IMG/VR virus record: IMGVR_UViG_3300035180_001778
Span: 1 to 64,000 of that record
Strand: one strand, 5' to 3'
Length of the DNA: 64,000 nt
The notes beneath the pieces were generated by a model. The model was not told where the DNA came from. It saw only the letters and a program-made list of their open reading frames with translations, and searched no databases. The position numbers and the translations under genes were made by a program. Positions 3,470 through 28,713 of this stretch are shown piece after piece. How positions within the stretch are numbered: position 1 is the first letter of the stretch; each line of letters starts with the position of its first letter.

Positions 3470-3948
3470 AGGTCATCCTCCAGGATCTTGGCCCAAGCAT
3501 TCAACGGGCCCGCGACAACAGCCGGCGTGTCCTCCCAGAGGAGCTGCCCCTTCAGGTGAACCGGCCGCCAGAGGTGAGCCCGCCGCTCCCTCTTCCATGT
3601 GTTGTAGGGCACCTTCTGGTAGTCCCCGCCCTCGGTCGGCCAGTAAACGAAGGTCGGATTCCCGATTTCTTCGTCGGCGGTCATGTCCTGGTTCGGGTGG
3701 AAGAAGGCGTGGCCGGGGCCCTTCGCGAGCTGGACATAGCTCGGATTTGCGCCTTCCGGCTTCATGAGCTTGCGGGCGGTGAGTTCCGCGCAGCCCTTCA
3801 CCTCCATGGCGTTCTCCACGAACGCCTTCCTGAAGAGGTCTGCAACCCGGTCAGTCATTTCTGAGTTCGGAGTGAGAAAGAGGACGGATCCTCCATCGAG
3901 CACAGTCTGTGCGACTTCCAGGCGGAGTTTCTTGTCGAGCTTGGGCAT
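3466..3948 (-). CDS. Hypothetical protein with C-terminal tag (LNAWAKILEDDL)
   Basis: ORF; GGTGTA motif 13 nt upstream. Confidence 0.8.
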   Translation of the reverse strand: MPKLDKKLRLEVAQTVLDGGSVLFLTPNSEMTDRVADLFRKAFVENAMEVKGCAELTARKLMKPEGANPSYVQLAKGPGHAFFHPNQDMTADEEIGNPTFVYWPTEGGDYQKVPYNTWKRERRAHLWRPVHLKGQLLWEDTPAVVAGPLNAWAKILEDDL

Positions 3949-19294: not shown

Positions 19295-20209
19295 TCACAC
19301 CTTGGGGGGCATCTCGAACTTGAAGTACTTCGGCGGGCCGATCACTCGTCGAAGTACCTCGTTGAATTTCTCGACGAGGTCCCATGCGTTGTTCGGCCGG
19401 AGGTGTTGCATGGGAGACAGGCACTCCCTCAAGAACCTCTGAATGGGCTCCGGTGTGGTATCCGGCATCGCGTTCGTGGTGACGTCCCCGCCTTGCAGGG
19501 CGACCATGCACTTGGCCAGCATGTAGATGTCCGTCGCCGCCGTCGGGATCTCCTTGGCGAGAATCTCGGGAGCGTAGAAGCTACGCCAAGGGGCGGACAT
19601 GGCCCGAACCTTGTTCCGCCGTGTGTTCGCGTTGGTGACGGCGTAAGACCAGTCGATCAGCTTGGCCCCGTGGTCGGCCGGATGGATCAGCAAGTGCGGA
19701 GGGAGGACCGCTCCGTGAAGGACGTTCTTCTCATGGACGTACCCGAGGCCTTCCAGCCCGCGCTTGAACATCCAGACCATGTTCTGGTACTCGATGCCCG
19801 CGGGGTAGGCCTTCAGGATGTCCGCGACGGAGACGTGCTCCCCAAGCCAGGGAAAGACGTTGATCCGTTTCCCCTCCCGTTCGTTGTGGAAGGAGTAGCT
19901 GAGCTTGGAAAGGTAGCGGAGGAACCCAGCGTTCGCCTCTTCTGCGGGGAAGAGGTGCCGGATGACGTCCGCCTCGTGCTCGACGAGGTCGTTGACGTCG
20001 ACCCCATGAGAGACCTTCAGGGCCGCAGGGCGGCCGTTGTAGGTGCCTCGGTAGATGTCGCAGAGGTCCCCTTCCGCAACCTTCATGTCGAAGGTGAAGA
20101 TTGCGGTGTCCCCCTCGAGGTTACCATCGTCATCCGCCATGAGCGCTTCCCACGCATTGGTGGCGTGACGTGGTCGCGTGGGGGGCAGAATAATCGTGAT
20201 GAGGTCCAT
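19295..20209 (-). CDS. Atypical Ser/Thr protein kinase-fold protein with N-terminal tag (TNAWEALMADDD)
   Basis: AALK, HEAD, LHGAVLPPHLLI, LIDWSYA, YAPE, TDIYMLA subdomains. Confidence 0.8.
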   Translation of the reverse strand: MDLITIILPPTRPRHATNAWEALMADDDGNLEGDTAIFTFDMKVAEGDLCDIYRGTYNGRPAALKVSHGVDVNDLVEHEADVIRHLFPAEEANAGFLRYLSKLSYSFHNEREGKRINVFPWLGEHVSVADILKAYPAGIEYQNMVWMFKRGLEGLGYVHEKNVLHGAVLPPHLLIHPADHGAKLIDWSYAVTNANTRRNKVRAMSAPWRSFYAPEILAKEIPTAATDIYMLAKCMVALQGGDVTTNAMPDTTPEPIQRFLRECLSPMQHLRPNNAWDLVEKFNEVLRRVIGPPKYFKFEMPPKV

Positions 20210-21552
20210 TATCGCTTGTCCTTGGCCGTGGGGCCGAACGACTTGATGGTGATCGGCGTCTTCAGGAGGTCTTCGATCGTGGGGATGAACATTCCCCAGT
20301 TGACCTTCTCTTCCAAGTACACCGGACACGCCTGAGAGAGATTCAAAGAGATTTTCTCTCGGTCGTCAAAACGCCCCCGGATATCGGACACCCAAGACAC
20401 ATCCCTCAACTCCGATGCAACACCCAGGCCCCCCAGGTAGTCCACACATATCCTGTGCGGTTCATTCGTCCGCAGACACGCCACATCGCAGTGCGTCATG
20501 GCGATCTCGTCGACACCCCCAATAACCCTCAGAGCGTATTGGGTGGCAAACGCGTCGAAGGCCCCCAACCTGAAATCCTGTTGCCAGGAGTTGAGCGCGT
20601 TGTGCTCGACCTTCGGGGTCGGGAGAAAGACGCCCTTGCCTTCCGTGACGAACGGACCCGCCCCGTGCCGGGTCATGTAGGACCGGAGGATACCGATCTT
20701 CCTGATGTCCCCCGAGAAGCCTTCGATCAGGTTGAGGGCGTTGCCGAATGTCGTGTCGGACCAGGTCGTGTAGGGGTGGAACCCGTAGTCTTGGTCGAGC
20801 AGGACACCCTGAGCGCCCTCGAAGATCGTGGTCCCTTCTTTCATGATGCGCTGGAGATAGGCTGAACCGACAACCTGGAGCGGGAGCTGGCGGAAACCAT
20901 TCAGCAAATCCCTGATCACAGGGTGAAGGCTGTTGCTCAACAGCATGTTCCACTCTGCCTTGAAAGAGCAGATGCAGTCGAGGTCCCTGGACTTGCACTC
21001 GGGGCTGTGGAGATGAGACAGCTCTGTGAGGTAGCGATCCCGGACCTTCGTCAACTGGATCCCAACCTTAGCCCGGTCTTCCAGGTCTCCGACTTGAAGG
21101 TCGTGATCCGGGAAGCTCAAGTGACTGCTCACCGTCTCGCCGATCCCCATTCCACAGGAGCCGTGGCGGTTCGAGCGGGCCATCTCCCGGATGCGGTTCG
21201 CCGTCACATGGTAGGGCGTTGTGACCAGAGCTTCTCTCTCGATGGTCAGCCGCTCGAAGGCGTCGAGGACACCCACAGAACGGAGGTGCTTCTCCTCGGA
21301 GAGCATGAAGATCGGGTTCACGAGCATGTGCCGGCTGAGGTGCGTCTTCACTCCGGGCACGAAGGTGGCGCTCCCGAACTGAGCGAAGGTGTGATGCCGA
21401 CCATCCTCCAGGACCACGTTGTGACCAGCCTGTGCTCCTCCGTTAAATCGGCACACTACCTTTGCGTTGTGTTTTCGGGCCAAATAATCAACGATGGTTC
21501 CTTTACCTTCGTCACCATAATTCAACCCAAGAACAATCAACGCTTCAGACAT
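20209..21552 (-). CDS. Adenylosuccinate synthetase (PurA)-fold ligase, divergent
   Basis: GLNYGDEGKG, GGAQAGHNV, FEGAQGVLLD...HPYTTWSDT. Confidence 0.85.
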   Translation of the reverse strand: MSEALIVLGLNYGDEGKGTIVDYLARKHNAKVVCRFNGGAQAGHNVVLEDGRHHTFAQFGSATFVPGVKTHLSRHMLVNPIFMLSEEKHLRSVGVLDAFERLTIEREALVTTPYHVTANRIREMARSNRHGSCGMGIGETVSSHLSFPDHDLQVGDLEDRAKVGIQLTKVRDRYLTELSHLHSPECKSRDLDCICSFKAEWNMLLSNSLHPVIRDLLNGFRQLPLQVVGSAYLQRIMKEGTTIFEGAQGVLLDQDYGFHPYTTWSDTTFGNALNLIEGFSGDIRKIGILRSYMTRHGAGPFVTEGKGVFLPTPKVEHNALNSWQQDFRLGAFDAFATQYALRVIGGVDEIAMTHCDVACLRTNEPHRICVDYLGGLGVASELRDVSWVSDIRGRFDDREKISLNLSQACPVYLEEKVNWGMFIPTIEDLLKTPITIKSFGPTAKDKR

Positions 21553-23726: not shown

Positions 23727-24244
23727 TCACCGCGGGTCGTGAGCGTACCGGCGGAGCGCATCCGTGTGGAGCGGGAAGCCCAGCTCCGCATCCCAGAGGG
23801 CGATGGCCACCTCGGATACCTCGCGGTTCGGCTTGAACGCCTTCTGGACGTCTTCCCAGAGAACGATAGGTCCTCCGCAGAAGATGATCAGGCTCGACCC
23901 CGAGGGAGTCGTCTTGACTTCGAGGAGACGGTACTCCGAGGCGGGGGTCACGATCCCCACTTCTTCCTCGATCTCCCGAGCTGCCGCTTGCTCGAAGGAT
24001 TCTCCGAAGTCGACGTAGCCGCCGGGGAGAGCGAGGGTCCCCTTGGCCGGTTCGATGTTGCGCCGGATGACGAGGGCTCCCATCAGGGTTTTGTGCTTAC
24101 TGACGGGGACGATGGCCACCACGACCGGGGCTGGATTGCGGTAGGTGCTGCATTCGCAGGTTGCACACTTCCAGGGCCACAACTTCAGTGCCTCGGAGGA
24201 GTAGTGCTGCCCGCAGAAGTGACAGAAAAGATGGGGGTAGGCAT
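23727..24244 (-). CDS. Nudix hydrolase with N-terminal zinc ribbon (YjhB-like)
   Basis: CHFC..CATC; Nudix box GGYVDFGESFEQAAAREIEEEVG; the ATG at 24244 needs +1 base in G5 at 24233-24237. Confidence 0.85.
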
Positions 24245-24251
24245 GGCGGAA

Positions 24252-24278
24252 GTACAAGAGACGCCCCCGAGGATCAAC
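24252..24278 (-). promoter_or_regulatory. Class I promoter-like motif (TGTAC, N15)
   Basis: Spacer contains a C5 run; N7 to ATG 24244. Confidence 0.65.
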
Positions 24279-24298: not shown

Positions 24299-25258
24299 CT
24301 AGAGCCGGATGGTCGAGCTGGTGCTGGCCTTGCCGAGGCTTTCGGCGAGGGGCGTCAGGCTGGCGACGGTGTCGTTGATCAGCTTGCCCGAGACACCCGC
24401 CGTCGCGAGGCCCTGGCGAGCCCGGTCGAGATCGGTCGTCCCTTCGCAGAGCCCCACGGTGAGGGCGATCGTCTCGGCCACGCCCTCGGCGGAGGCCAGA
24501 GCGAGGACGTGGGTCTCGTCGAAGAGCTTGACCCAGTAGTTGCGGATCCTGGAGTCACGCCCGCCGGACGTCTCGGCCGGGATGATGAAGAAGACGTTGT
24601 ACTTCTCCTGGGCTTCCGCGATGATCTGCTCCAGGGGGATGTCCTCCTGGAGCGTCTCGCCGAAGAGCGCCTCGACTTCACGCTTGCTCACCCTCAGGTA
24701 GGCCTCCTCATCGCCGAGGAGGAAGAGGTAGCCCTTCTTGTTGCGCTTCTCGACGCAGTCGATCTGCGTGTGCCGGGCGAAGAAGTAGAGCGCGTTCTGG
24801 TAGCTCTCCTGCTTCGTGCCCCCGCCGCCCGCTTCGAGCCAGACGTTGCTGAAGGTCTCGTCCATCTCGTTGCCCGACTCGAACTCGCCGATCTGGATCG
24901 AGCCCTTGTCGCTGCGGGCATCACCGACGCATCCGAAGAGGAGCTGAGGATGCTGGACGCCGTTCTCCGTGAGGAGGTTCATCAGCCGCGGGAGCTTCTC
25001 CTGAAAGCTCTTCGGGGTCGTCGACATCGAGCCCGTCACGTCGAACATCACGGCCACGGCGAGCGACTCGGGATGAGCCGCCGAGTCGCGGGACTCGCGG
25101 ATGAGCTTGTTCTTGGGGTCGAGCAGAGCGTGCGTCCGCTGCTCGGAACGCGGCTTTGACACGACGGCCGCCGAATAGGCGAACGTCGTGGTTGCCGTGC
25201 GGACACGATCCGCCTTGCGCGCATTGTAGAAGTCTTCGCTGTAGCTGGAACCGCCCAT
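24299..25258 (-). CDS. vWA-domain protein
   Basis: MIDAS-like DVTGSM; GGGG..QESY; FLLGDE. Confidence 0.8.
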   Translation of the reverse strand: MGGSSYSEDFYNARKADRVRTATTTFAYSAAVVSKPRSEQRTHALLDPKNKLIRESRDSAAHPESLAVAVMFDVTGSMSTTPKSFQEKLPRLMNLLTENGVQHPQLLFGCVGDARSDKGSIQIGEFESGNEMDETFSNVWLEAGGGGTKQESYQNALYFFARHTQIDCVEKRNKKGYLFLLGDEEAYLRVSKREVEALFGETLQEDIPLEQIIAEAQEKYNVFFIIPAETSGGRDSRIRNYWVKLFDETHVLALASAEGVAETIALTVGLCEGTTDLDRARQGLATAGVSGKLINDTVASLTPLAESLGKASTSSTIRL

Positions 25259-25333
25259 GGGGGACTCTCTTTCTTCGTCTCAGGTGAGAAGGTGTTGGGG
25301 TCACTCGCACTATGCGGCAACCCCAACATCGCT

Positions 25334-25513
25334 TCAGGGGGTCGCCGGGGTCTCGCCGGTCGGGGTCGTGGTGGGAGCCGGGGTCGTGACCGGGGGCTCT
25401 TCCTTGGTTTCCGGGACCGTCGGAGCGACCACCGCCGGGGTCGCCGGGACGGTCTCGCTCACAGCCTTCTTGGCACTGTCGCTGAACTCTTCGCTGTAGA
25501 CGCTGCTGCCCAT
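25334..25513 (-). CDS. Pro/Thr-rich mini-protein sharing its N-terminus with the vWA gene
   Basis: MGSSVYSEEF vs MGGSSYSEDF, with near-identical leaders. Confidence 0.5.
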   Translation of the reverse strand: MGSSVYSEEFSDSAKKAVSETVPATPAVVAPTVPETKEEPPVTTPAPTTTPTGETPATP

Positions 25514-25523
25514 GGGGGGCCTC

Positions 25524-25603
25524 TTTTCTTCTTGGGGGTCGACTTCGGTAGATGAGAGATACACCAGATACCCTTCATCTACCGAAGTTTTCTTCTTGGG
25601 GTC
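25524..25603. repeat. Direct repeat / inverted repeat cassette enclosing a GGTGTA motif
   Basis: TTTTCTTCTTGGGG(G)TC direct repeats flank the 14-bp IR ACTTCGGTAGATGA / TCATCTACCGAAGT. Confidence 0.85.
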
Positions 25604-26987
25604 AGAAGATGTGACGTTCCGAGATTTTCCGGATCTCGGCGAGGGTCGGCTGAACCAGGATCTTCCCGTTCTCGAAGACCGGGATGAGGGCGCTGTTCCG
25701 GCGCAAGCCCTGGACGGTCTTGTACTCGCCGTTCTCGTGTATGAGGTCGAGGAGCCCTGCCTTCGAGCGCTTGCCCTTGTCGGTGACGGGGTCCTTGAAG
25801 ACATCCCGGGGCTCGCCGTCGACCACGATGTTCGAGCACTTGTAGGCGAAGCGCTGGGTGTCGCGATTGACACCCTGAAGCAGAGCGCCACCCATGCCGA
25901 ATCCGATGTTCGAGGCGCTGTAGCCGTTGGCCATCATCACGTTGAGGATCTCGCGAATCGACTCCTCGTTCACGCCGTCGCCCTGGATCAGGCGGATGTA
26001 CTTCGGAAGGACCTTGAAGCCCTTGGTGTTGGTCGTCATCCCGACCTTGCGCTCCAAGATATGGAGACACTTGAGGATGACCTCCGAAGGATTGCCCGAG
26101 TCCGGCCGGATCACGAGGGTCGCGCCCGACTCCTTGATCTCCTCGCGGAGGGTGTCACCCCAGATGTTCTCGACCGTGTTGTAGAGGTCGTAGGAGTCGC
26201 TGACGCAGGCGAACATCTTGCCCGGCTTCGCGAACTGGTGAACCATGTTGCGGTAGGCGTCGATCTCGTTCGACTTGCCCCAGCTCGTGATCGTCGAGTG
26301 CTCCGACGCGGGGATCGAGAAGCCCGCCATCTTGTCCTTGTAGTAGAAGTTGGCGAAGCGGATGCCCTCGATGGTGTCCGAGCCGAGGAAGTTGACCAGG
26401 TGGCTCATGCCGCCGATGCCGGCCGATTCCCGCGAGCTGACGCCCCGGCTGCCGAAGTCGTGGAGCTTGAATCCGATCTCGCCGACCGGGTCATCCGAGG
26501 ACTTCACGAGGGCCTCGAAGATGATCTTCTTGATGAAGAACGACTGGGTGGCGACGGTGATCGGATACCAGAGGCGCACGAGCTGGTTCTCGATCCACGA
26601 GCCGACCCACGGAGCCTCGGAATCCGTCGACTCGACGGTCATGAGCACGTTGTGCGTCGGGACGAGCGTGCCTTCCGGAACCGCGTTGATCTTCACCGGG
26701 TAGAAGCCGCCCTTGGCCACCAGACGGTCCCAGGCGGCCTTGGGGAAGGGCTCACCATGGAGAGCGGCGAAGTCGGCCGCTTCGTTGACGTGGGCCTGCG
26801 TGAAGCCCTTGCTGAGGTACTCCTGGCACAGGTAGCTGAGGCCGAAGAACAGGGTCGAGCCGTAGCGGCCACCGCGCGACTCGAAGTAGTTGAACATGCG
26901 CGTCATGCCCGGCGGATATTGCAGCTCGGGGTGCGAGAGCTTGTAGCTGTCGGTGTCGAGGATCGGGTTCGTTTCGTACGTGGTCAT
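25602..26987 (-). CDS. nadV: Nicotinamide phosphoribosyltransferase
   Basis: TDSYKLSH, HDFGSRG, ASEHS, VSDSYD, IRPDSG, IQGDG, FGMGGALLQ..NRDT. Confidence 0.92.
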   Translation of the reverse strand: MTTYETNPILDTDSYKLSHPELQYPPGMTRMFNYFESRGGRYGSTLFFGLSYLCQEYLSKGFTQAHVNEAADFAALHGEPFPKAAWDRLVAKGGFYPVKINAVPEGTLVPTHNVLMTVESTDSEAPWVGSWIENQLVRLWYPITVATQSFFIKKIIFEALVKSSDDPVGEIGFKLHDFGSRGVSSRESAGIGGMSHLVNFLGSDTIEGIRFANFYYKDKMAGFSIPASEHSTITSWGKSNEIDAYRNMVHQFAKPGKMFACVSDSYDLYNTVENIWGDTLREEIKESGATLVIRPDSGNPSEVILKCLHILERKVGMTTNTKGFKVLPKYIRLIQGDGVNEESIREILNVMMANGYSASNIGFGMGGALLQGVNRDTQRFAYKCSNIVVDGEPRDVFKDPVTDKGKRSKAGLLDLIHENGEYKTVQGLRRNSALIPVFENGKILVQPTLAEIRKISERHIF

Positions 26988-26998
26988 GGGGGTCTCCA

Positions 26999-27715
26999 TC
27001 AAATCTCGAAGTTGAAACCTTCACGAACAGCTCGCTCGTAAGCAACGCTGTCGAATCTGTAGAGGGTTGCTCGTCGGTGCGGAACACCAACCTGGACACC
27101 CGCCTCTTTGAGGATGCCCATTGCCAGGATGCGCTTGCGGAAGTTCCGCTTGTCGAGCGTCCGATTGAGGATCAGCTCGTAGAGCGATTGCAGCTCCGTC
27201 AGAGAGAACTTCGGCGGAAGAAGGTTGAACCCGATGGGGGCATATCGAACCTTCGCCTGGAGCCTTGCCCAAGCATCCTTGAGAATCTTGTCGTGATCGA
27301 AAGCCTTGTACATCTGGAGGGCTTTCTCGATCGGCCACCACTTGGCCTCTGCCGCATCATCACCACCCTTGACCGGATGGTCTTCCAGGCGGACCAGAGC
27401 GTAGTAGGCGACCGAGATCACCCGGCCTCGCGGGTCTCTCCCGGGGGTTCCGTAGGTGCCGAGCTGCTCCAGAAAGCCCACTTGAGCCCCCGTCTCCTCG
27501 CTCAGCTCACGTTGCGCCGCTTCGTCCAGGGACTCGCCCTGATTCCCGGTATCCGAGGTCTCGACGAACCCGCCCGGAAGAGCCCACAACCCCTGAAAGG
27601 GATCGGAGCCACGGCGGATCAGGAGAACGTGCATCTCCTTGAGATGGTCTGCGACGCCGAAGACAACGCAGTCGACCGTGACGGACGGTCGGGGATATTC
27701 GTACGTGTGACTCAT
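26999..27715 (-). CDS. nrtR: NrtR-family Nudix-related transcriptional regulator
   Basis: TVDCVVF...WALPGGF Nudix domain plus wHTH: [11 protein letters not shown]...[10 protein letters not shown]...ATLYRF. Confidence 0.88.
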
Positions 27716-27756
27716 GGTGTTTCTTCTACACCAACCATGGTGTGCTTTTCACACAA
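27715..27756. promoter_or_regulatory. Two tandem NrtR-operator-like palindromes overlapping the nrtR start and promoter
   Basis: TGGTGT-N7-ACACCA (27715-27733) and TGGTGT-N7-ACACAA (27738-27756). Confidence 0.65.
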
Positions 27757-27799
27757 ATCAACAGGCTGGCGGACGATTGTTGCTAACCCCTCGGAATCC

Positions 27800-27964
27800 C
27801 TAGCGGTTTTTCAGCTTCGGGGTGGGGTTCTTGCGGATCCACTGCGCGACGGCCTTGCACAGGCCGTCGTGAGACTTCGTCCCGAGCGGAATCTTGAGGG
27901 CTCGGGCAAGCCTGACGACGTTCGCGGGGTCCGCGTTGAAGAGGTCGTTGTAGTCGATCGTCAT
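27800..27964 (-). CDS. Small hypothetical protein
   Basis: MTIDYNDLFNADP...; class I promoter variant upstream. Confidence 0.6.
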   Translation of the reverse strand: MTIDYNDLFNADPANVVRLARALKIPLGTKSHDGLCKAVAQWIRKNPTPKLKNR

Positions 27965-27975
27965 GGCGGGGAGCA

Positions 27976-28003
27976 ATACAGCTCGACCCTTCCGCGGATC
28001 AAC
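27976..28003 (-). promoter_or_regulatory. Class I promoter-like motif (TGTAT)
   Basis: N16; N11 to ATG 27964. Confidence 0.7.
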
Positions 28004-28509
28004 TACCAGAGACCTTTCGAGCGGAGAATTTCGGAGGTGTGTTCGATGCCCACATCGTAGGCACGGTAGAACGCATCAGCGTCCTCTTCAGACATCCTGG
28101 AGAGGGTCCCAGAGGGGTCGCAGAACAGGACCCGGCTTTGGACGTCTTCCCCCGAGACAAACCAGAAGCAGTCAATGACGAAGCAATCCATCGTCCCGAT
28201 GAAGGATTGCGTACCCAGCTCTTGGAGCCTGGCAAGGTCGTGTCGTATCTCTTGTCAGTGCTTCGGAGGATAGATCAGACAGGGAAGGAGGCCTGAAATC
28301 TCTTTCTCATGAGAAAAAGCAGAAATCTCCCACCAGAGCTGTTCGATGGCAAACCGGAGACCCTCTATCGTTGTGCCGAGCACGAGATGGGGTTTAGGCT
28401 CCAAACGAAGCCCTCGAAAGCACGAGATGGGTTCGATCTTGCCCGAGGTCCGAGGAGGAGTTGGGGACGGTGGGTGCAAGAGGTCCCACATTTCGTCGAT
28501 CTCGGCCAT
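28003..28509 (-). pseudogene. Hypothetical ORF interrupted by in-frame TGA (28255-28257)
   Basis: ...IYPPKH*QEIRHDLARLQELGTQSFIGTMDCF... is one frame. Confidence 0.55.
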
Positions 28510-28515
28510 GACTTC

Positions 28516-28713
28516 TCAGTCGTCTTCCATGAGGTGATCGTGCCAGGTTGCTTGCTTCGATGCCTCCTCCGGCACCTCGACAATCGTCCCCGAGAAGATA
28601 GAGCGCTGCAACCAGGGCTGCCGCACCAAGTCCTCTTCGGTGATGGTCGCCCCCTTGGCGAAGAGGATGGAGTTGCCTACCCCAAAGAAGTCCTTCATTG
28701 CACGGTATTTCAT
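28516..28713 (-). CDS. Tandem paralog 3 with tag (ATWHDHLMEDD)
   Basis: MKYRAMKDFF...; ATGA overlap. Confidence 0.75.
   Translation of the reverse strand: MKYRAMKDFFGVGNSILFAKGATITEEDLVRQPWLQRSIFSGTIVEVPEEASKQATWHDHLMEDD

What the first reader, a model, noticed from the sequence alone, without database searches (positions are those of the whole stretch)
25602..27756. Phage NAD salvage gene wired to its own ADP-ribose-sensing repressor, with two operator-like sites
SEEN: nrtR lies directly upstream of NAMPT. Two tandem palindromes, TGGTGT-N7-ACACCA and TGGTGT-N7-ACACAA, overlap the nrtR start codon and its GGTGTA motif. KNOWLEDGE: NrtR regulators bind palindromes with a GT-N7-AC core and are released by ADP-ribose; host SIR2/TIR NADases produce ADP-ribose and nicotinamide. 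INFERENCE: the phage may sense host NAD destruction and switch on salvage only when attacked, i.e. an inducible anti-defence circuit.
Basis: partly seen in the sequence, partly recalled or inferred. Interest (0 to 1): 0.68.

Follow-up and report, generated by a model that had tools for sequence, protein, structure and literature searches.

The report
Phage NAD-salvage operon with NrtR repressor
A giant phage from sediment and microbial-mat metagenomes carries a nicotinamide-salvage gene behind its own NrtR-type repressor and two matching operator sites, so it probably ties NAD rebuilding to ADP-ribose, a product of NAD-destroying host defences, although no experiment shows this yet.

Summary
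On the minus strand, nrtR (27715..26999; Nudix plus NrtR winged helix) lies 11 nt upstream of a NadV-type NAMPT (26987..25602). Two 19-bp palindromes precede it: TGGTGT-N7-ACACCA at 27715-27733 and a one-mismatch copy at 27738-27756. They are the only intergenic copies in the 350-kb phage record.

Comparative evidence makes them very likely NrtR operators:
- The same two-site layout, with conserved arms and free spacers, recurs upstream of nrtR in diverged jumbo phages.
- Bacterial clade-mates that sit in pncB/pncA/nadE operons carry the same motif.
- Where the half-site changes from GTGT to GGT, a residue next to the conserved NFRK segment of the winged helix changes from R to S.
- Operator A fills the spacer of a sigma-70-like promoter.

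Linkage of nrtR to NAMPT is common in viral loci (12 of 29) and absent in the 80 closest bacterial loci.

ADP-ribose sensing and defence-triggered induction remain inference.
- An incoming genome has no repressor, so the likely logic is on at entry, self-shutoff, and relief by ADP-ribose.
- The Nudix catalytic core is intact, so the protein may also hydrolyse ADP-ribose.
- One complete relative keeps nrtR and both operators but has no NAMPT.

I found no paper that describes a phage NrtR.

The parts
27738..27756 (.). Operator A (distal). It reads TTGTGT-N7-ACACCA on the coding (minus) strand, with one arm mismatch. It fills the spacer of the putative promoter.
   Evidence: Equivalent sites at the same offset (-41) in L019, and in L006, L009 and L010.
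27715..27733 (.). Operator B (proximal), a perfect TGGTGT-N7-ACACCA. Its last base is the A of the nrtR ATG. It covers the purine-rich stretch upstream of the ATG and the predicted transcription start.
   Evidence: Same offset (-18) in L019.
27756..27761 (-). Putative -35 hexamer TTGATT, directly abutting operator A (inferred).
   Evidence: TTGACA or TTGACG sits at the same place in L023, L036, L028 and L181. The strict consensus scan found no promoter.
27734..27739 (-). Putative -10 hexamer CATGGT, 16 nt after the -35 and between the two operators (inferred).
   Evidence: xAxxxT hexamers occupy the same position in relatives, including CATAAT in L036.
26999..27715 (-). nrtR: a 238-aa Nudix plus NrtR winged-helix regulator. 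Its REUXEEXGU core is intact.
25602..26987 (-). NadV-type nicotinamide phosphoribosyltransferase (NAMPT), 11 nt downstream of the nrtR stop.
   Evidence: phrog_448, 2.9e-148; PRK09198, 596 bits.
25542..25588 (-). Long hairpin just after the NAMPT stop, with no U-tract. Its tip carries CTGGTGTA, which is an operator half-site. It is flanked by a 14-nt direct repeat at 25524-25537 and 25588-25601. It may mark the operon boundary or an RNA element; its function is unknown.
   Evidence: (-32.9 kcal/mol, z -4.5), (L019 has a different stem but the same tip sequence).

Best explanation
This is a self-repressed two-gene operon, nrtR-NAMPT, carried by a jumbo phage. A sigma-70-like promoter, presumably read by host RNA polymerase, is bracketed by two NrtR operators. 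Operator A fills the -35/-10 spacer. Operator B covers the predicted transcription start and the stretch just before the ATG. When the genome enters, no repressor is present and the operon fires. NrtR then accumulates, binds both sites as dimers and shuts off its own gene and NAMPT, which limits the PRPP drain that NAMPT causes. ADP-ribose, which appears when NAD is cleaved (for example by SIR2, TIR or SEFIR defence NADases), binds the Nudix domain and releases NrtR. NAMPT is then made for as long as NAD is being destroyed. NAMPT converts the other cleavage product, nicotinamide, to NMN. An NMNAT-like protein encoded elsewhere in the genome (G000 349133-350299) would complete NAD synthesis, giving a NARP2-type pathway. 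Because the Nudix catalytic core is intact, NrtR probably also hydrolyses ADP-ribose to AMP and ribose-5-phosphate. That would feed PRPP synthesis and reset the switch. Shown here: gene identities, operon layout, uniqueness of the operators, conservation and covariation of the operators, and a phage-specific nrtR-NAMPT linkage. Inferred: the promoter, ADP-ribose as effector, catalysis, and the counter-defence role.
For: Domains and full-length similarity to solved NrtR and AraR. An 11-nt gap between the two genes. The two sites are the only intergenic copies in 350 kb. Two-site architecture upstream of nrtR in phage relatives at 67%, 56%, 55% and 37% protein identity, with arms conserved and spacers free. 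In 31 non-redundant viral loci, GT-N7-AC palindromes occur at 3.2 per kb in the -150..0 region against 0.22 per kb elsewhere. Forty-five of 80 bacterial clade-mates carry T(A/G)GTGT-N7-ACAC(T/C)A, 12 of them in tandem, mostly 22-26 bp apart. The bacterial neighbours sampled in five of these loci are pncB, pncA and nadE. R190 pairs with the GTGT half-site in 9 lineages, and S pairs with the GGT half-site in 5 lineages. A -35 hexamer abuts operator A in 5 lineages. NAMPT at 46% identity or more lies within 3 kb in 12 of 29 viral loci and in 0 of 80 bacterial loci; counting all NAMPT-like hits, 13 of 29 against 5 of 80, Fisher p = 1e-5. In the five close homologues looked up, NAMPT is the next or next-but-one gene. 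The NMNAT-like P0122 has the GSFNPFHDGH and ISSTELR motifs. No Prs/Adps-type gene was found. Literature: ADP-ribose releases NrtR, tandem sites exist at prs-nadV, and an intact Nudix signature goes with activity (PMC2330246). NARP2 makes NAD even without a defence system, consumes PRPP, and was toxic to clone (10.1101/2024.02.11.579819).
Against: There are no binding, expression or infection data, and no RNA run holds the locus. The effector is inferred from family membership only. NrtR-family effectors vary, and the best PDB match is the arabinose sensor AraR. The score against the curated NtrR equivalog is 177 bits, below its cut-off of 400. An active Nudix site would consume the inducer. 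The NMNAT-like gene has no operator, so only half of the pathway would be gated. The complete relative G001 keeps nrtR and both operators without any NAMPT. The promoter hexamers are weak in this window (7 of 12), and the consensus scan reports none. The host is unknown.
Confidence: 0.6

Rival explanations
1. This is housekeeping control only. The module limits NAMPT output (PRPP drain, toxicity) and tracks ordinary NAD turnover during infection, as bacterial NrtR regulons do. It has no specific link to NADase defence systems.
For: Bacterial clade-mates use the same motif in ordinary pncB/pncA/nadE operons. NARP2 was reported to be costly and toxic. Negative autoregulation alone gives a self-limiting pulse.
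Against: Phage NrtRs are re-linked to NAMPT, the enzyme that uses nicotinamide, the other product of NAD cleavage, in 12 of 29 viral loci against 0 of 80 bacterial loci. NARP2 has a demonstrated counter-defence function. The two readings are not mutually exclusive.
Confidence: 0.3
2. The protein is mainly an enzyme, a self-regulated ADP-ribose pyrophosphatase that removes ADP-ribose or supplies ribose-5-phosphate. The operators only set its own level, and NAMPT is a co-transcribed passenger.
For: The REUXEEXGU core is intact and nearly invariant in the clade. NuhA, with an intact signature, is a highly active ADPR pyrophosphatase (PMC2330246). G001 keeps nrtR and its operators without NAMPT. 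The Nudix domain resembles NadM-type ADPR pyrophosphatase domains.
Against: The winged helix, its conserved NFRK segment and the cognate operators are all conserved and co-vary, so DNA binding is under selection. The GX5E part of the Nudix box carries an insertion. Whatever the protein's main role, co-transcription would place NAMPT under the same control.
Confidence: 0.25
3. The effector is not ADP-ribose but another metabolite, such as NAD(P)H, NaAD, phospho-ADPR, a defence signalling nucleotide derived from ADPR, or a sugar.
For: NaAD, NADH, NADP and pADPR also released Shewanella NrtR in vitro. AraR-type family members sense arabinose.
Against: ADPR was the most effective ligand for both NrtRs tested. 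This clade sits in NAD operons and keeps a Nudix core of the kind seen in ADPR pyrophosphatases.
Confidence: 0.15
4. The palindromes are not protein operators but chance repeats, RNA hairpins or a terminator of the upstream 58-aa ORF.
For: Each could form a 6-bp stem. They lie 44-85 nt after the upstream ORF's stop codon.
Against: The arm sequence, not merely the pairing, is conserved from phages to Planctomycetota, Myxococcota and Cyanobacteria, while the spacers vary. There is no U-tract and no terminator call here. The sites show 14-fold enrichment upstream of nrtR and covariation with the protein.
Confidence: 0.03

Closest known systems
Bacterial NrtR regulons, especially Shewanella oneidensis nrtR-prs-nadV with tandem operators (Rodionov et al. 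2008, PMC2330246)
   Same: A Nudix plus winged-helix repressor. A 19-21 bp palindrome with a GT-N7-AC core. Tandem sites. A nadV (NAMPT) target. ADP-ribose as anti-repressor in the studied members.
   Different: This one is encoded by a jumbo phage. There is no prs in the operon or the genome record. nrtR heads the operon, so it represses itself. The Nudix catalytic core is intact, whereas soNrtR, syNrtR and MsNrtR are degenerate and inactive. Its closest bacterial clade-mates control pncB/pncA/nadE, not nadV.
NARP2, the phage Nampt plus Nmnat pathway of Vibrio phage KVP40 (Osterman et al. 2024 preprint, 10.1101/2024.02.11.579819)
   Same: A NadV-type NAMPT together with an NMNAT-like gene in one phage genome, with no Adps. 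The expected product is NAD made from nicotinamide and PRPP.
   Different: KVP40 NARP2 is described as constitutive and costly. Here NAMPT sits behind a metabolite-sensing repressor. The Nudix domain is fused to a DNA-binding domain rather than to the NMNAT, as it is in NadM/NatV. The NMNAT-like gene lies about 28 kb from nrtR if the record is circularly joined (about 321 kb apart in the linear record), carries an unknown 210-aa N-terminal domain, and has not been tested.
[quoted passage not shown]
   Same: NrtR architecture with a conserved catalytic signature. Cyanobacterial proteins are among the 50-53% identical relatives.
   Different: I could not retrieve NuhA itself to compare. The phage protein has a 4-6 residue insertion in the GX5E part of the box.
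Aca repressors of anti-CRISPR operons
   Same: A phage counter-defence gene placed under a phage-encoded repressor that binds inverted repeats in its own promoter, giving an early burst followed by shutoff.
   Different: Aca proteins are not known to sense a ligand. Here the repressor has a small-molecule-binding, probably catalytic, domain. This comparison is from my own knowledge and was not tested here.

Membership tests
NrtR family of Nudix-related transcriptional regulators | N-terminal Nudix domain related to ADPR pyrophosphatases | tested here: met
   PF00293, 4.7e-22, residues 12-146. NadM-type Nudix models reach 4.7e-20.
NrtR family of Nudix-related transcriptional regulators | C-terminal NrtR-type winged helix-turn-helix domain | tested here: met
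   PF21906 NrtR_WHD, 9.6e-24, residues 162-221, full profile. Full-length alignment to 5bs6 and 3gz5.
NrtR family of Nudix-related transcriptional regulators | Cognate palindromic operator with a GT-N7-AC core upstream of target genes | tested here: met
   Two sites at 27715-27756. They are conserved in phage and bacterial relatives and co-vary with the winged-helix domain.
NrtR family of Nudix-related transcriptional regulators | Genomic linkage to NAD metabolism genes | tested here: met
   NAMPT lies 11 nt downstream. Bacterial clade-mates sit next to pncB, pncA and nadE.
NrtR family of Nudix-related transcriptional regulators | Score above the curated NCBIfam equivalog NF050029 (ADPR-responsive repressor) | tested here: not met
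   177 bits against a cut-off of 400. It is a family member but not the curated equivalog, so function cannot be transferred automatically.
NrtR family of Nudix-related transcriptional regulators | Specific DNA binding that ADP-ribose relieves | not testable with these tools
   This needs EMSA or ITC. The structural paper listing the ADPR-contact residues (PMC2896262) is not held.
NARP2 (phage Nampt plus Nmnat NAD reconstitution) | Nampt of the NadV type rather than the Namat type | tested here: met
   PRK09198 at 596 bits, above the 405 cut-off, and phrog_448 at 2.9e-148. No Adps/Prs-like gene in the record (the record is about 73% complete).
NARP2 (phage Nampt plus Nmnat NAD reconstitution) | Nmnat encoded in the same genome | tested here: inconclusive
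   P0122 has a C-terminal CTP_transf_like domain scoring 22-24 bits, just over the cut-off. It carries the GSFNPFHDGH and ISSTELR motifs. There is no PDB sequence match, and substrate specificity is unknown.
NARP2 (phage Nampt plus Nmnat NAD reconstitution) | Rescues the phage from NAD-depleting defence systems | not testable with these tools
   This needs infection assays.
Intrinsic terminator or RNA hairpin (as an alternative reading of the palindromes) | GC-rich stem followed by a U-tract, or compensatory rather than sequence-specific conservation | tested here: not met
   No terminator is called at 27715-27756. The arms are conserved in sequence across phyla.

The most novel reading that the evidence does not exclude
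Jumbo phages have taken an ADP-ribose-sensing repressor from bacterial NAD regulons and rewired it onto NAMPT. The reaction product of a host NADase defence would then switch on, and keep on, the phage's NAD reconstitution. That would be a counter-defence that is transcriptionally induced by the defence it counters. The sensor would double as the ADPR pyrophosphatase that recycles the second cleavage product.
Probability: 0.3. Interest if true: 0.8.

Novelty: new variant of a known kind. Interest (0 to 1): 0.6.

Why it matters
Phage NAD reconstitution pathways are known, but they are described as constitutive, and NARP2 is reported as costly because it consumes PRPP and overproduces NAD even when no defence is present. 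A phage-encoded, metabolite-gated version would show how phages avoid that cost. It would also be a rare case of a virus sensing a host immune reaction through its small-molecule product. The module is compact: one promoter, two 19-bp operators and a 238-aa repressor. It can be tested directly in vitro and in reporter strains. The survey also shows that proteins annotated as MutT/NUDIX hydrolase or 8-oxo-dGTP diphosphatase in phage catalogues (phrog_1198, JGI names) include transcription factors. I found no paper describing a phage NrtR in three full-text searches or in the text of the papers opened.

Tried and rejected
- The strict sigma-70 and terminator scan of 24800-28600 found no promoter, and its only terminator-like site is unrelated. 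The promoter proposal therefore rests on comparative geometry.
- Further operator copies: the sites at 75503, 111748 and 280946 all lie inside long ORFs and were dismissed as chance. The GTGT-N7-ACAC core occurs 4 times against 3.1 expected.
- No operator lies upstream of the NMNAT-like gene, where the upstream sequence is coding.
- A Prs/Adps gene (NARP1) was sought and not found.
- The NAMPT-less relative G001 was searched for NAMPT and for extra operators. It has neither.
- Bacillus phage G gp273 and the NrtR of the 636-kb phage LR756504 show no GTGT-type site directly upstream of nrtR. LR756504 has one just before a NadM-like gene.
- The NrtR structure paper (PMC2896262) is not held, so ADPR-contact residues could not be checked.
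- A PDB sequence search of the NMNAT-like protein and of the vWA-like protein gave nothing.
- The alignment-based fold of the post-NAMPT hairpin was uninformative, with 3 sequences and a poor alignment.
- Host assignment failed. The nearest named relatives are spread over Myxococcota, Planctomycetota, Bacteroidota, Cyanobacteria and other phyla.
- No structure prediction or complex prediction was run. The fold is already fixed by sequence, and no protein-protein binding claim is made.
Full report
**Setting.** The window is the first 64 kb of a 350,469-bp IMG/VR virus record (59.7% GC, no terminal repeats found, CheckV completeness about 73%). Near-identical DNA occurs in sediment and microbial-mat metagenomes, and no RNA run holds it. 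Relatives carrying the same gene neighbourhood are contigs of 116-448 kb, so this is a jumbo-phage lineage.

**The observation.** Genes run on the minus strand in this order:
- a 58-aa ORF (27976..27800);
- an 84-bp gap;
- nrtR (27715..26999, P0001, 238 aa);
- an 11-nt gap containing GGAG;
- NAMPT (26987..25602, P0002);
- a long hairpin;
- a 62-aa ORF;
- a 319-aa phrog_2971 protein;
- a zinc-ribbon Nudix protein;
- further downstream, purA.

P0001 has a Nudix domain (4.7e-22) and an NrtR winged helix (9.6e-24). It aligns over its full length with the solved regulators AraR (7e-41) and Shewanella NrtR (2e-35). It also hits the NCBIfam model for the ADPR-responsive repressor at 4.6e-52, though at 177 bits it is below that narrow model's cut-off of 400. 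P0002 is a NadV-type NAMPT, scoring 596 bits on PRK09198 against a cut-off of 405 and 2.9e-148 on phrog_448.

A perfect TGGTGT-N7-ACACCA lies at 27715-27733 and a one-mismatch copy at 27738-27756. The proximal site shares its last base with the ATG. Across the whole 350 kb, the only other match at up to one mismatch, and the only other GTGT-N7-ACAC cores, lie inside long ORFs. The core alone occurs 4 times against 3.1 expected. What stands out is therefore the adjacent pair with extended arms in front of nrtR, not the core count.

**Are the palindromes NrtR operators?** Four independent lines say yes.

1. *Phage footprinting.* Relatives whose NrtR is 67% (L019), 56% (L006), 55% (L007-9) and 37% (L010) identical each have two sites of the form xxGTGT-N7-ACACxx upstream of nrtR. 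The arms are conserved and the spacers unrelated. In L019 the sites sit at the same offsets (-41 and -18) as in the window. Over 31 non-redundant viral NrtR loci, GT-N7-AC palindromes occur at 3.2 per kb in the 150 bp before nrtR and at 0.22 per kb elsewhere.

2. *Bacterial clade-mates.* Eighty bacterial loci with 49-59% identical NrtRs were examined. They come from Planctomycetota, Myxococcota, Bacteroidota, Cyanobacteria, Verrucomicrobiota and Acidobacteriota. Forty-five carry T(A/G)GTGT-N7-ACAC(T/C)A, mostly within 150 bp of nrtR. Twelve carry tandem pairs, mostly 22-26 bp apart. The operon partners sampled in five of these loci are pncB, pncA and nadE, so this is an NAD-regulon clade and not a sugar-regulon clade. 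Archangium and Corallococcus also have tandem pairs downstream of nrtR, in front of a PP2C phosphatase gene.

3. *Protein-DNA covariation.* Nine lineages with the GTGT half-site have ..DKR-NFRK.. in the conserved segment of the winged-helix domain. This segment is probably the recognition helix, which was not tested here. Five lineages whose sites read GGT-N7-ACC (L026, L031, L033, L036, L181) have serine in place of R190. These lineages are not phylogenetically independent, so the evidence is suggestive only.

4. *Promoter geometry.* In the window and in L023, L036, L028 and L181, a TTGAxx hexamer abuts operator A. Operator A fills a 16-17 nt spacer and an xAxxxT hexamer follows. L036 has TTGACA-16-CATAAT. 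In the window the hexamers are weak (TTGATT and CATGGT), and the strict scan reports no promoter. The promoter, and a transcription start inside operator B, are therefore inferences.

Most NrtR sites are 21-bp palindromes with a GT-N7-AC core. Shewanella prs-nadV has two functional tandem sites. ADP-ribose was the most effective of the metabolites that released both tested NrtRs from DNA (PMC2330246). MsNrtR is an auto-repressor that ADP-ribose releases (PMC6800001).

**What is phage-specific?** NAMPT at 46% identity or more to P0002 lies within 3 kb of nrtR in 12 of 29 non-redundant viral loci. It does so in none of the 80 closest bacterial loci, whose partners are NAPRTase/PncB-type genes. 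Counting all NAMPT-like hits, the figures are 13 of 29 against 5 of 80 (Fisher p = 1e-5). In all five close metagenomic homologues that I looked up, NAMPT is the next or next-but-one gene. At least one of those contigs may be bacterial.

More distant phage NrtR-like genes also sit with NAD genes. Bacillus phage G gp273 lies upstream of an isochorismatase (pncA-like) and an NAPRTase. The 636-kb phage LR756504 has a CTGTGT-N7-ACACAA site 9 nt before a NadM-like gene. Phages have thus repeatedly coupled this sensor to salvage enzymes. In this lineage the enzyme is the one that consumes nicotinamide.

**Is the pathway complete?** The record has no Prs/Adps-like gene, which argues against NARP1. 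It encodes a 388-aa protein (P0122, G000 349133-350299) with a C-terminal nucleotidyltransferase domain just above the Pfam cut-off. That domain carries GSFNPFHDGH and ISSTELR motifs, which I recognise as NadD/NMNAT signatures (my own knowledge). The protein belongs to a mostly viral cluster. It has no operator. This fits a NARP2-type pathway in which only the NAMPT step is gated, but the NMNAT assignment is untested.

The repressor is made from the promoter it controls and is absent when the DNA enters. The expected behaviour is therefore an early burst, then self-shutoff, then relief for as long as the effector is present. A host NrtR with the same specificity could pre-repress the operon. 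That is possible in principle, because bacterial clade-mates use the same motif, but the host is unknown.

The Osterman et al. preprint reports that NARP2 overproduces NAD even without a defence system, consumes PRPP, and could not be cloned in E. coli because of toxicity. That gives a rationale for gating.

The REUXEEXGU core is intact in P0001 (RELSEETGA) and nearly invariant in the clade. It is degenerate in soNrtR, AraR and MsNrtR. Rodionov et al. note that an intact signature goes with catalysis, NuhA being the example. The protein may therefore also hydrolyse ADP-ribose. That would supply ribose-5-phosphate for PRPP synthesis and would make the induction self-limiting. A 4-6 residue insertion in the GX5E segment leaves activity uncertain.

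**Evidence that cuts against the simple model.** G001, a complete 407-kb relative with terminal repeats, keeps nrtR and exactly two operators but has no NAMPT anywhere. There nrtR is followed directly by the phrog_2971 protein (50% identical to window 24299-25258), then purA and a kinase. NrtR therefore has a value beyond NAMPT, either as an enzyme or as the regulator of that conserved downstream block. In the window the block lies beyond the post-NAMPT hairpin, so its co-regulation is open.

**Novelty.** Three full-text searches found no paper that describes a phage-encoded NrtR (NrtR with phage and NAMPT; NrtR with bacteriophage; NARP1, NARP2 and ADPR). The NARP3 paper, the Aravind survey of viral NAD-ADPr systems and the NARP1/2 preprint mention NrtR, or ADPR-dependent transcription, only for bacteria. 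Catalogues name these proteins MutT/NUDIX hydrolase or 8-oxo-dGTP diphosphatase. The parts are known kinds: an NrtR regulon and NARP2. Their combination in a phage, and the regulatory logic it implies, are new.

**Verdict.**
- That this is an NrtR-family repressor acting on these two sites and controlling nrtR-NAMPT: about 0.85.
- That ADP-ribose is the effector: about 0.6.
- That the physiological purpose is defence-triggered NAD reconstitution: about 0.3-0.4.

Noticed in passing
window 25524-25601: A 47-nt hairpin (-32.9 kcal/mol, z -4.5, no U-tract) lies right after the NAMPT stop, flanked by a 14-nt direct repeat (CCCCAAGAAGAAAA). Its tip carries CTGGTGTA, which equals an operator half-site. 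In L019 the stem sequence is different but the tip is the same. It could be a terminator, an RNA stability element or an extra NrtR half-site. Only two independent lineages show it.
   Followed up: partly
window 23727-24257 (minus strand): A second Nudix protein (176 aa) with an N-terminal Cys-rich zinc ribbon. Its best NCBIfam hit is NudC-type NAD diphosphatase (3.8e-11, well below the cut-off). It lies in the same gene block as NAMPT.
   Followed up: partly
window 24299-25258 (minus strand); L009 4758-5693: A phrog_2971 protein of unknown function, with a DVTGSM motif that resembles a vWA MIDAS site, is syntenic downstream of nrtR or NAMPT in several jumbo phages. It is 50% identical in the NAMPT-less phage, where it directly follows nrtR.
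   Followed up: partly
window 20209-21552 (minus strand): A phage-encoded adenylosuccinate synthetase (purA, 1.4e-63) is conserved in the same block in L009, L019 and L181, followed there by a protein-kinase-like gene.
   Followed up: no
G000 349133-350299 (outside the window; L011 841-2007): A 388-aa protein with an unknown 210-aa N-terminal domain and a C-terminal NadD/NMNAT-like domain (GSFNPFHDGH, ISSTELR). It is the candidate second enzyme of a NARP2-type pathway and has no operator.
   Followed up: partly
G001 (407,078-bp complete phage; L009, L182, L183): This phage keeps nrtR and exactly two TGTGT-N7-ACACA sites, at 308264 and 308300, and has no NAMPT homologue anywhere in the genome.
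   Followed up: yes
L017 5705-5745 and 8456-8496; L124 and L163 about 3753-3795: In Archangium and Corallococcus, tandem TGGTGT-N7-ACAC sites 22 bp apart lie between nrtR and a PP2C-type phosphatase gene. In Archangium a further pair lies before an unannotated 356-aa gene. This would be an NrtR regulon that is not obviously NAD-related.
   Followed up: no
L015 (Bacillus phage G, gp273-gp277); L016 6078-7073 (LR756504): The NrtR-like gp273 of phage G lies upstream of an isochorismatase (pncA-like) and an NAPRTase. The 636-kb uncultured phage has an NrtR and a CTGTGT-N7-ACACAA site 9 nt before a NadM-like NMNAT-Nudix gene.
   Followed up: partly
L031 2940-3000; L181 3420-3500; L036 2915-2985: Some phage lineages use GGT-N7-ACC half-sites. 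L031 has three overlapping CCATGGT-N7-ACCATGG sites at 15-bp steps. These lineages have Ser instead of Arg before the NFRK motif of the winged helix.
   Followed up: partly
neighbourhood of P0088 (no DNA held): A close nrtR-NAMPT homologue pair lies three genes upstream of an ADP-ribosylglycohydrolase-family gene and next to a nucleoside deoxyribosyltransferase-like gene.
   Followed up: no
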